A stretch of DNA of 64,000 bases, taken from the NCBI GenBank assembly GCA_051294905.1, contig CM119386.1, positions 8,804,001 to 8,868,000 on the forward strand. The letters run 5' to 3'. Each line of letters opens with the position of its first letter. Within the stretch, counting starts at the first letter, position 1. Source of the DNA: Botryllus schlosseri (taxonomy: Eukaryota). The notes under the pieces were generated by a model. That model ran no database searches and was not told where the DNA came from. It saw only the letters and a program-made list of their open reading frames with translations. The position numbers were made by a program, and so were the translations under genes. Shown here piece by piece: positions 1,417 to 63,266 of the stretch.

Positions 1417-2028
1417 CTGGCTTGGAAGTAGTCTTCTCTGTAACCACCGGGGTGCTCTTCGTAGTCACCACCTCTTTTGTGGTTTCCACAGTGACCGGAG
1501 TAGTCTCAACGATAAGTTTGACGCAGCCACGGAATTCCACTCTCATTGTCACATCGCTATCCGGCGCTGAGCGAATTGGATAAATTCGAACTGCCGACGC
1601 ATGAATATCGTCACGGAGGAAGCGTTCGACGACACTTGTGTCATCGGCGTTGCCGTTGAAGGTCTCCCAGACTTTATCATCGAGCACCGGACCCGTGGGC
1701 GTGTTCAAAATTTTATTTACTTCGATACGAACAAACTCGTTGCTCTCTGTATTGGCATCTACGTACGACACGTTATACTGCGAAGCAAATTGCCCATTAC
1801 CGCCACCTTGAGTGAGGATGCTATGGATAATAACTGGATTCTTGAAAGAAACCTCCAGATACGGGGTAGGGTCGGATGTTTCTGGAGACCAGGCCGGTGG
1901 GATTCCAATATCATTATCATTCGTGATTCTGGCGTACTTCGCTTCTTTACCCTCTTTGCTGGTAGAAGCTGAGATATCTTCATCCGCGATAGCGTGGCTT
2001 GTCATACCCAACGGTTCGTCGCACACTG
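1417..2028 (-). CDS. Exon with FA58C-14 and the start of a further PTS; last exon in the window
   Basis: [23 protein letters not shown]...YAR...AWSP...YLEVSF...LTQG...FNGNADD...VRIYP...MRVEFRGC; donor cca g|gtgcgg. Confidence 0.9.

Positions 2029-63266: not shown

What the first reader, a model, noticed from the sequence alone, without database searches (positions are those of the whole stretch)
1417..63266. A >6,200-aa hybrid of gel-forming mucin, SCO-spondin and hemocytin architectures
Seen: EMI-like, 5xEGF, D1-D2-D'-D3, TIL/VWC-like islands, LDLa, then >=14 FA58C domains spaced by PTS, still open at the window edge. Known: vertebrate gel mucins have D1-D2-D'-D3 plus PTS with CysD inserts; SCO-spondin has EMI, three VWD, LDLa and one FA58C plus TSP1 repeats; insect hemocytin/hemolectin has VWDs and two FA58C. 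Discoidin-containing mucin-like proteins have been noted in invertebrate deuterostomes, so the class is not new, but this scale and combination may be uncharacterised. Inference: a polymerising, glycan-binding secreted scaffold (mucus net, adhesive, clot or cuticle/tunic).
Basis: partly seen in the sequence, partly recalled or inferred. Interest (0 to 1): 0.85.

Follow-up and report, generated by a model that had tools for sequence, protein, structure and literature searches.

The report
Giant sea-squirt mucin with discoidin beads
The window holds most of one expressed sea-squirt gene for a giant, probably secreted, sugar-coated protein with a von Willebrand/mucin-type assembly head and 14 discoidin binding domains strung along a mucin-like thread; it is a new variant built from known parts, and its tissue and function are not yet known.

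Summary
The gene lies on the minus strand. A curated model has 63 exons, all GT-AG, and a stop-free 6,252-aa frame from 63266 to 1417, open at both ends.

Pfam confirms EGF, three VWD-C8-TIL units with a D' TIL, extra TIL and VWC domains, one LDLa and F5/8-type-C domains. A self-built profile counts exactly 14 discoidin domains. They are separated by cysteine-free linkers of 78-288 aa with 49-62% Ser+Thr+Pro.

Spliced RNA contigs of 3.2 and 10.4 kb join all eight exons between 39000 and 33079. This rules out the suspected break at 35-37 kb.

The closest head relative is an uncharacterised octocoral protein, also EMI-EGF-D1D2D'D3 (37.7% identity over about 1,400 aa). In trees the pair falls outside the vertebrate gel-forming mucins and the hemocytin/amphioxus/mollusc group. 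SCO-spondin could not be sampled.

The window has no thrombospondin repeats and no CysD. The signal peptide and the C-terminus lie outside it.

The likely role is an extracellular, heavily O-glycosylated, ligand-binding gel or fibre. That is inferred, not shown. Verdict: a new variant of a known kind, of moderate interest.

The parts
62444..63266 (-). EMI-like module in two exons (63266-63099, 62541-62444). This is the first visible coding sequence; the signal-peptide exon is not in the window.
   Evidence: Pfam is silent on the two separate pieces. The module aligns with all six Cys to the Pfam-positive EMI of P0285. No ATG, hydrophobic stretch and donor candidate was found in 63267-64000.
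59717..62383 (-). Five EGF modules, one exon each (62383-62285, 60315-60220, 60145-60050, 59981-59883, 59814-59717).
   Evidence: EGF regular-expression scan; Pfam EGF_2 and EGF_PEAR1L on one exon; splice sites read by eye.
53910..59616 (-). D1 assembly (VWD-C8-TIL-E) in seven exons, carrying a CGLC motif.
   Evidence: Pfam VWD (profile 3-34 and 114-151), C8 and TIL; CGLC motif.
49194..52855 (-). D2 assembly (VWD-C8-TIL-E) in seven exons. The first Cys of the CGLC motif is lost (LGLCG).
   Evidence: Pfam VWD pieces 1-18, 19-64, 75-133 and 136-154, plus C8 and TIL; splice sites checked.
43764..48794 (-). D'D3: TIL' exon 48794-48583, then VWD3 (47896-47665, 47602-47462, 47084-46952), C8-3 (46024-45692), TIL3 (44178-43944) and E3 plus the start of PTS (43878-43764). 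VWD3 carries GDPH and CGIC motifs.
   Evidence: Pfam TIL, VWD and C8 (82 bits) and TIL. The best solved matches are the D3 of MUC2, MUC5B and VWF. The CxCxC cluster is kept and the C1142 insert is absent.
35663..42511 (-). Linker region in the order PTS, TIL, VWC, PTS, TIL-like, VWC, PTS, LDLa, VWC, PTS (exons 42511-42403, 42064-41862, 39992-39846, 39733-39601, 39046-38876, 38330-38172, 37584-37514, 37388-37212, 36782-36655, 35895-35663).
   Evidence: Pfam TIL, VWC and Ldl_recept_a. The six exons from 39046 down to 35663 are joined in RNA contigs with minus-strand GT..AG introns.
33079..34607 (-). Discoidin (FA58C) domain 1, in two exons (34607-34284, 33324-33079).
   Evidence: Pfam F5_F8_type_C; self-profile; the splice is confirmed by RNA contigs.
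19386..32514 (-). Super-repeat A: PTS exons plus discoidin domains 2-6. Domain 2 is in three exons (30735-29542), domains 3 and 4 in exon 26248-24636, and domains 5 and 6 in exon 21131-19386.
   Evidence: Pfam; self-profile; pairing with super-repeat B.
7337..18934 (-). Super-repeat B: PTS exons plus discoidin domains 7-11. Domain 7 is in three exons (18248-17115), domains 8 and 9 in exon 13143-11552, and domains 10 and 11 in exon 9022-7337.
   Evidence: Pfam; self-profile. Domains 2-6 pair with 7-11 at 46-63% identity, and the two blocks are 56% identical.
1417..6314 (-). Discoidin domains 12 and 13 (exon 6314-4130), three small PTS exons (3609-3501, 3441-3348, 3094-3023), and discoidin domain 14 with a PTS tail (2028-1417), ending at a donor site.
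   Evidence: Pfam on sub-ranges; self-profile; donor CCAG|GTGCGG scores 3.2, the median for this gene.

Best explanation
This is one expressed gene of a sea squirt that encodes a giant extracellular mosaic glycoprotein. The visible part is EMI, five EGF, D1-D2-D'-D3 (VWD-C8-TIL units), a short run of TIL, VWC and LDLa modules, and then about 4,250 aa in which 14 discoidin (F5/8 type C) domains alternate with Thr/Ser/Pro-rich linkers. Shown here: the architecture, the splicing across the head-to-tail junction, and strong sample-specific expression. Inferred from known families: the linkers are densely O-glycosylated and extended, as in mucins; the D assemblies drive disulfide-linked oligomerisation in the secretory pathway, as in VWF, gel-forming mucins and hemolectin; and the discoidin domains act as ligand-binding beads for glycans, lipids or matrix. 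Together these would cross-link the threads to each other, to particles or to surfaces. The product would be a sticky gel or fibre, such as feeding or gut mucus, an adhesive, the tunic matrix or a clot. By descent the head belongs to an old EMI-EGF-VWD lineage also seen in an octocoral, not to the vertebrate mucins or to hemocytin proper.
For: A stop-free 6,252-aa frame runs over 63 GT-AG exons. Every module type is called by Pfam. There are 14 discoidin domains, each bounded by the two Cys typical of the fold. The linkers are 49-62% S+T+P, contain no Cys and total about 2,000 aa. RNA contigs of 3,195 and 10,427 nt join all eight exons between 39000 and 33079, at word depths of 11 to 109. A third RNA run is also deeply covered there, while the raw-read run X23 has no exonic reads, so expression is sample-specific. 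The discoidin copies are old and diverged (25-40% identity, 46-63% between super-repeat partners), so this is not an assembly duplication. The head is collinear with P0285 (914 bits, 37.7% identity over model residues 89-1464). Trees exclude the head from the vertebrate mucin clade (100/100) and the hemocytin-type clade (100/99). The nearest solved relatives of the discoidin domains are lactadherin, factor V/VIII C domains and neuropilin b1, all ligand-binding modules. The LDLa keeps the DDGSDE calcium cage.
Against: No signal peptide is visible, so secretion is inferred only from the domain types. The C-terminus is unseen, so C-terminal dimerisation through a cystine knot is unknown. D3 lacks the insert that carries VWF Cys1142, D2 has lost the first Cys of CGLC, and D'D3 has an even Cys count of 50; N-terminal disulfide multimerisation is therefore not assured. 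No tissue, ligand or glycosylation data exist. The window row has a long branch (1.81) in the tree and pairs with the coral protein at only 82/70 to 90/87 support. The AU tests are weak (p 0.062 and 0.024) and were framed after the tree was seen. Only the 33-39 kb stretch was checked against RNA; the other exon boundaries are predictions.
Confidence: 0.62

Rival explanations
1. It is the sea-squirt orthologue or co-orthologue of SCO-spondin, the Reissner-fibre protein. In this lineage it would have lost its thrombospondin repeats and expanded its single discoidin domain and its PTS.
For: It shares an N-terminal EMI followed by three VWD units, then TIL/VWC-type modules, LDLa and F5/8 type C. 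Lang et al. 2016 (PMC4948705) report that invertebrate mucin-like proteins sit nearest to SCO-spondins in their tree. The window protein lies outside both the mucin and the hemocytin clades. The closest relative, P0285, has seven LDLa and twelve VWC domains.
Against: There is no thrombospondin type-1 motif on either strand of the window and none by Pfam. There is only one LDLa, against about ten in SCO-spondin. Five EGF modules sit between EMI and D1, which SCO-spondin lacks. About 2,000 aa of PTS are present. No SCO-spondin sequence could be fetched, so the tree does not test this reading.
Confidence: 0.15
2. It is a hemolectin/hemocytin-type clotting protein ('3+2' VWD layout). The two further VWD units and the cystine knot would lie beyond the window, and blood cells would release the protein to seal wounds or trap microbes.
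For: Apart from the Ciona fragment, the named long proteins found with the discoidin query are hemocytin-like proteins of Priapulus, Limulus, Strigamia and a scorpion. Those checked have 5 VWD, 5 C8, 5 TIL and 3-7 F5/8 domains. The order of three VWD units followed by discoidin domains is the same. Botryllus rejection libraries contain VWF-like and factor 5/8-domain transcripts (PMC2527998).
Against: The D1-D3 head is excluded from the hemocytin/amphioxus/mollusc clade by a 100/99 branch, and the AU test gives p = 0.024. There is no CysD, which those proteins carry. There are 14 discoidin domains and about 2,000 aa of PTS, whereas Lang 2016 describes at most a very small PTS in insect hemolectins. 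The EMI plus five-EGF head differs from the hemocytin head, which looks by eye like sushi-like stretches around a single EGF.
Confidence: 0.12
3. Two adjacent genes (a VWD-rich gene and a discoidin/PTS gene) were merged by the reader, or part of the array is an assembly artefact.
For: The Ciona intestinalis RefSeq model XP_026696163.1 contains only the discoidin/PTS part plus TIL, VWC and LDLa, and has no VWD.
Against: Two independent RNA contigs splice LDLa, VWC, PTS and discoidin 1 together. The 10.4-kb contig extends 5.4 kb further 5' and 3.5 kb further 3'. The reading frame is continuous over all 63 exons. The Ciona model starts inside a PTS stretch with no signal peptide, so it looks truncated. 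The repeated blocks are only 56% identical.
Confidence: 0.03

Closest known systems
Uncharacterised octocoral protein 'mucin-2-like isoform X2' of Dendronephthya gigantea (P0285, 4,064 aa)
   Same: It has an N-terminal EMI, an EGF array, then D1-D2-D'-D3, collinear with the window protein at 37.7% identity over about 1,400 aa (914 bits). D3 is 50% identical. Downstream it has TIL, VWC and LDLa modules and one stretch with weak discoidin similarity. It is the sister of the window protein in both trees.
   Different: It has a WAP domain after the EMI, seven LDLa and twelve VWC domains, and no PTS/discoidin array (no Pfam F5/8 hit at E <= 0.01). It is only a database prediction with no known function.
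Hemolectin/hemocytin and the F5/8-containing invertebrate mucin-like proteins (Lang et al. 2016, PMC4948705)
   Same: Three N-terminal VWD-C8-TIL units are followed by F5/8 type C domains, with some PTS. These are large proteins described as secreted and multimer-forming. They were the best long named hits of the discoidin query.
   Different: Those proteins have 2-7 discoidin domains, CysD domains and two more VWD units after the discoidin region, and by eye a head of sushi-like stretches around one EGF. The window protein has 14 discoidin domains, no CysD and an EMI plus five-EGF head, and it falls outside their clade. Lang et al. list F5/8 mucin-like proteins in protostomes, hemichordates and cephalochordates, but do not name tunicates.
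Vertebrate gel-forming mucins (MUC2, MUC5AC, MUC5B) and VWF
   Same: They share the D1-D2-D'-D3 head; the window D3 exons match the D3 of MUC2, MUC5B and VWF best. They also share a long central O-glycosylation region broken up by globular domains, and the CxCxC cluster in C8-3.
   Different: The interrupting domains are discoidin, not CysD. The PTS is degenerate, with only one short tandem repeat. An EMI-EGF head is present. The Cys1142-bearing insert is missing. No furin-like site is found in the first 2,000 residues, so none follows D2. The window protein lies outside the vertebrate clade, which has 100/100 support. The D4, VWC and CTCK end is unseen.
SCO-spondin
   Same: EMI first, then three VWD units, LDLa, TIL/VWC-type modules and an F5/8 type C domain.
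   Different: The window has no thrombospondin repeats, one LDLa and 14 discoidin domains, five EGF modules and large PTS regions. Descent was not tested.
Ciona intestinalis 'mucin-5AC-like' XP_026696163.1 (P0151, 2,281 aa)
   Same: It is the only named tunicate relative found. It has discoidin/PTS repeats 28-38% identical to the window's, plus a TIL-VWC-TIL-VWC-VWC-LDLa stretch resembling window residues 1689-1929.
   Different: It has no VWD part. The TIL/VWC/LDLa stretch follows the discoidin repeats instead of preceding them. The model starts inside a PTS stretch and ends in an LDLa, so it is probably incomplete.

Membership tests
Gel-forming mucin (vertebrate type) | N-terminal D1-D2-D'-D3 (three VWD-C8-TIL units) | tested here: met
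   Pfam VWD, C8 and TIL three times in order, plus a D' TIL; D3 exons match the D3 of MUC2, MUC5B and VWF best.
Gel-forming mucin (vertebrate type) | Long central Pro/Thr/Ser-rich O-glycosylation region | tested here: met
   About 2,000 aa of Cys-free linkers at 49-62% S+T+P. Glycosylation itself was not tested.
Gel-forming mucin (vertebrate type) | CysD (Mucin2_WxxW) domains interrupting the PTS | tested here: not met
   No Mucin2_WxxW hit in any exon scanned. The interrupting domains are F5/8 type C.
Gel-forming mucin (vertebrate type) | C-terminal D4, VWC and cystine knot | not testable with these tools
   The frame runs out of the window at 1417.
Gel-forming mucin (vertebrate type) | D1-D3 head groups with vertebrate mucins in a tree | tested here: not met
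   The vertebrate clade has 100/100 support without the window protein. The AU test for forced monophyly on D3 alone gives p = 0.062, so this is not firmly rejected.
Hemolectin/hemocytin ('3+2' VWD) | [quoted passage not shown] | tested here: met
Hemolectin/hemocytin ('3+2' VWD) | Two further VWD-C8-TIL units after the discoidin domains | not testable with these tools
   None lies within the window. The 3' end lies outside it or at 1370.
Hemolectin/hemocytin ('3+2' VWD) | Head groups with hemocytins in a tree | tested here: not met
   A 100/99 branch unites 25 hemocytin, amphioxus and mollusc rows without the window protein. AU p = 0.024 on D3. The long branch calls for caution.
SCO-spondin | N-terminal EMI followed by three VWD units | tested here: met
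   The EMI is supported through alignment to the Pfam-positive EMI of P0285; VWD three times. Pfam itself is silent on the split EMI exons.
SCO-spondin | Many thrombospondin type-1 repeats | tested here: not met
   A motif scan of all six frames finds none, and no TSP_1 appears in any Pfam result. Repeats beyond the window cannot be excluded.
SCO-spondin | Cluster of about 8-10 LDLa domains after D3 | tested here: not met
   One LDLa only (37388-37212).
SCO-spondin | Groups with SCO-spondins in a tree | not tested
EMI-EGF-D1D2D'D3 lineage (window protein plus octocoral P0285; unnamed) | Collinear EMI, EGF array and three D assemblies, and sister placement in trees | tested here: met
   Blastp collinearity; EMI; sister placement at 90/87 on D3 and 82/70 on D1-D3. 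There are only two members and one long branch, so the lineage is provisional.

The most novel reading that the evidence does not exclude
The protein is a principal structural thread of a tunicate-specific secreted material, most attractively the endostyle's filter-feeding mucus net. In this reading the D-assembly head builds the polymer, and the 14 diverged discoidin beads set the cross-links or capture particles. It would also represent an ancient EMI-EGF-VWD lineage, shared with cnidarians, that stands near the common root of SCO-spondin, hemocytin and gel-forming mucins.
Probability: 0.15. Interest if true: 0.8.

Novelty: new variant of a known kind. Interest (0 to 1): 0.45.

Why it matters
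Tunicates are the sister group of vertebrates, and they feed with a secreted mucus net. I found no molecular description of that net in the papers I could search. The published survey of mucin evolution (Lang et al. 2016) reports F5/8-containing mucin-like proteins in protostomes, hemichordates and cephalochordates, and their loss in vertebrates. It does not name tunicates.

This gene shows that a tunicate keeps such a protein and has taken it to an extreme: 14 discoidin domains take the place that CysD domains hold in vertebrate mucins. Its head is of a type otherwise seen here only in a coral.

The gene gives a concrete, expressed candidate for tunicate mucus, adhesive or matrix biology, and so for biofouling by sea squirts. 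It is also a useful outgroup for working out how SCO-spondin, hemocytin, VWF and the gel-forming mucins relate. It is built entirely from known modules, and similar mixtures are already known, so it is an extension rather than a surprise.

Tried and rejected
1. A first codon-usage Viterbi gene model missed many Cys-rich exons. A second pass with homology bonuses split the gene falsely at 59.7 kb and produced a 1-nt exon. Both were corrected by hand.

2. Pfam on the two EMI exons separately gave nothing.

3. Pfam on the whole 760-aa exon 4111-6390 gave nothing, but sub-ranges gave two F5/8 hits.

4. Two word-indexed protein searches, with the Ciona protein and with the 727-aa exon, returned nothing useful; I attribute this to swamping by PTS words. 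No full-length tunicate orthologue and no 3' extension were recovered.

5. The contig encoding the 77%-identical orthologue fragment P0001 could not be read.

6. The test of whether 900-1416 is intron or 3' UTR, using word shares in RNA runs, was ambiguous: RNA 0.06-0.19 against DNA 0.32.

7. The ESM Atlas returned only generic C8 clusters.

8. Rfam found no RNA family in the window.

9. Lang et al. 2007 was not held, and the Lang 2016 supplements were not held.

10. Papers on ascidian endostyle transcriptomes do not name this gene.

11. I rejected the ideas of a recent assembly duplication (the blocks are 56% identical), of two genes (the RNA splices through), and of a plus-strand gene. The plus-strand ORFs overlap the large minus-strand exons and translate to Val-rich low-complexity sequence, so I read them as their mirror image.

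Full report
**Orientation and gene model**

The long open frames with discoidin-like and Thr-rich translations are all on the minus strand.

I built a codon-usage and splice-site Viterbi model. I then added frame-specific bonuses from tblastn hits of hemocytin-like proteins. Weak junctions were corrected by reading the three frames.

The curated model has 63 exons. All 62 introns are GT-AG, with a median length of 499 nt. The coding sequence is 18,758 nt and gives a stop-free frame of 6,252 aa.

**One transcript**

Logan contigs of three RNA runs and the raw reads of a fourth were laid on 33001-39000. One contig of 3,195 nt (run X1) and one of 10,427 nt (run X3) each join eight exons: 39000-38874, 38328-38172, 37584-37514, 37388-37212, 36782-36655, 35895-35662, 34606-34283 and 33323-33079.

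Every skipped stretch ends CT..AC on the plus strand, which is GT..AG on the minus strand. These boundaries equal my predicted ones, within the one to three bases that fit either side of a joint.

The X3 contig has 5,414 nt beyond 39000 on the 5' side. My model has 5,116 nt of coding sequence there, so about 300 nt of mRNA (signal peptide and 5' UTR) should lie upstream of 63266. On the 3' side the contig extends 3,550 nt, which reaches into exon 21131-19386. I did not see those outer parts aligned.

Word depth is high in X3 and X9 (about 70-400). The raw-read run X23 has no exonic reads, so expression is strong but sample-specific. Most contigs are 95-99% identical to the window, as expected for a polymorphic species.

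**Domains**

Pfam scans of individual exons gave the following.
- EGF.
- D1: VWD profile positions 3-34 and 114-151, then C8 and TIL.
- D2: VWD pieces 1-18, 19-64, 75-133 and 136-154, then C8 and TIL. A further TIL (D') follows.
- D3: VWD 1-60 and 112-153, C8 at 82 bits, and TIL.
- After D3: TIL, VWC, a weak TIL, VWC, LDLa and VWC.
- F5/8 type C twice in each of five large exons, once in the last exon, and in the first half-domain exon.

A pattern scan finds five EGF modules and no more. A jackhmmer profile seeded from one discoidin copy finds 14 domains, including the two that are each split over three exons. Each starts and ends with a Cys.

The linkers are 78-288 aa long, 49-62% Ser+Thr+Pro, and free of Cys from linker 2 onward. 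They sum to about 2,000 aa. Only one short tandem repeat lies in them (5559-5779), so the PTS is degenerate and not a VNTR.

No thrombospondin motif occurs in any frame. No CysD was reported.

**Internal history**

Discoidin domains 2-6 pair with domains 7-11 at 46-63% identity, while all other pairs are 24-46% identical. The two blocks (32514-19386 and 18934-7337) are 56% identical in protein and have the same exon layout. This is one old duplication of a five-domain unit, not an assembly artefact.

**The EMI**

Pfam is silent on the two exons taken separately. The octocoral protein P0285 has a full-length Pfam EMI right after its signal peptide (25.7 bits against a cut-off of 25). The window's first 90 residues align to it with all cysteines matched, including the CCxGxxGxxC end. 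The score is 96 against 34 +/- 7 for 500 shuffles. I accept it as an EMI domain on that basis.

**Relatives**

A full HMMER scan of 1.84 billion representatives with discoidin domains 5-6 gave three kinds of hit.
- A 631-aa fragment 77-79% identical to exactly that exon. It is an orthologue from another sample.
- A Ciona intestinalis 'mucin-5AC-like' model. It has discoidin/PTS repeats plus TIL, VWC and LDLa, but no VWD. It starts inside a PTS stretch, so it is probably truncated.
- Hemocytin-like proteins of Priapulus, Limulus, Strigamia and a scorpion. Those scanned have 5 VWD, 5 C8, 5 TIL, 3-7 discoidin domains and CysD.

A search with the D3 region of the Priapulus protein brought in FCGBP, hemocytins, amphioxus and mollusc mucin-like proteins, vertebrate MUC2/5AC/5B and one octocoral protein.

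That octocoral protein, P0285, is by far the best match to the window's D3: 410 bits against at most 312 for any other. It is collinear from the EGF array through D3 (914 bits, 37.7% identity) and shares the EMI.

**Trees**

On D3 (368 columns) the window protein pairs with P0285 at 90/87 support. On D1-D3 (1,218 columns) the pair has 82/70 support. It lies outside a 100/100 vertebrate mucin clade and a 100/99 clade of 25 hemocytin, amphioxus and mollusc proteins.

The window branch is long (1.81). AU tests on D3 are weak: p = 0.062 for joining the vertebrate mucins and p = 0.024 for joining the hemocytin group. Both groups were named after the tree was seen.

The shared EMI-EGF head is independent support for the pairing. 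SCO-spondin, VWF and otogelin were not among the sequences I could fetch. Lang et al. 2016 state that invertebrate mucin-like proteins sit nearest to SCO-spondins, so that kinship remains open.

**Assembly chemistry**

D1 keeps a CGLC motif and D3 a CGIC motif, but D2 reads LGLCG. There is no furin-like site in the first 2,000 residues.

The VWF chains in the solved-structure search appear to be indexed as in the full-length protein. On that indexing, the window keeps the C8-3 cluster CxCxC, which corresponds to VWF Cys1097, 1099 and 1101. It has no counterpart of the short insert that holds Cys1142: the window reads [12 protein letters not shown] where VWF reads PQSC...GYEC-EWRYNSC. TIL3 resembles VWF TIL1 and TIL2 more than TIL3 (46 against 15 bits).

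D'D3 holds 50 Cys. One of the two cysteines that VWF uses for head-to-head bonding is therefore conserved and the other is not, so polymerisation is plausible but unproven. GDPH, the acid-labile autocleavage motif of some mucin and FCGBP VWD domains, occurs only in VWD3.

**Ends of the gene**

No ATG, hydrophobic stretch and donor candidate fits upstream of 63266 within the window.

At the other end the exon stops at CCAG|GTGCGG, an ordinary donor. If that donor were not used, the frame would stop at 1370, and the next AATAAA is at 784. RNA runs hold 0.06-0.19 of the words of 900-1416 against 0.32 in DNA runs, which does not decide the matter.

**Function**

The nearest solved discoidin domains are lactadherin C2, factor V/VIII C domains, neuropilin b1 and retinoschisin. 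All are ligand-binding modules, but no ligand can be read from sequence here.

Taken together, the mucin-like linkers, the D-assembly head, the lectin-type beads and the strong, sample-specific expression most simply describe a secreted, heavily glycosylated, self-associating and ligand-binding gel or fibre. I rank feeding or gut mucus first, then adhesive or tunic matrix, then a clotting role. Nothing here discriminates among them.

**Literature and earlier notes**

I found no paper describing this architecture in a tunicate. Ci-GFM1 of Ciona (2,880 aa, with chitin-binding domains) is a different protein.

The identification of the animal as a sea squirt rests on two things: other follow-up notes of this scan, which I did not verify, and the Ciona best named hit.

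**Verdict**

The 'hybrid' label is apt as a description but not as ancestry. The function is inferred. This is a new variant of a known kind.

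Noticed in passing
window 34801-35000 and 35801-36400 (introns): These short intronic stretches have very high word depth in RNA runs (up to about 2,500 in X3 and 1,070 in X9). Reads and contigs run on into unlike sequence there, and even the run that lacks the gene's exons has reads on them. They are probably dispersed repeats transcribed elsewhere. Rfam finds no known RNA family there.
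   Followed up: partly
window 41323-40352, 32125-31334 and 10975-10709 (introns): Copies of one dispersed element give near-identical pseudo-translations (for example [34 protein letters not shown]) in two different introns of the gene. A third intron gives a similar Ser-rich periodic reading.
   Followed up: no
window 47850-47824 (VWD3 start): GDPH, the acid-triggered autocleavage motif of some mucin and FCGBP VWD domains, is present only in the third VWD (GDPHYETFD). VWD1 has NGAHY and VWD2 has GEDHY.
   Followed up: no
window 51045-51025 (end of VWD2): D2 reads VLGLCG and so lacks the first Cys of the CGLC motif, which D1 (CGLC) and D3 (CGIC) keep. In VWF the D1 and D2 motifs are needed for multimer assembly (Mayadas and Wagner 1992, as cited in PMC7333891).
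   Followed up: no
window 5559-5779: This is the only clear tandem repeat inside the PTS: two copies of a 111-nt unit at 94% identity, encoding S/T-rich repeats such as [17 protein letters not shown]. The rest of the PTS is degenerate.
   Followed up: no
P0151 (Ciona intestinalis XP_026696163.1), residues 1889-2281: In the Ciona model, a TIL-VWC-PTS-TIL-VWC-VWC-LDLa stretch like window residues 1689-1929 follows the discoidin repeats instead of preceding them, and the model ends inside an LDLa. Either the model is mis-joined or truncated, or such cassettes recur, in which case the window gene may carry another one beyond its 3' edge.
   Followed up: partly
window 33079-39000 (exons): RNA contigs of the same species differ from the window at many exonic sites; most contigs are 95-99% identical, and different runs carry different alleles. 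This indicates high heterozygosity.
   Followed up: no
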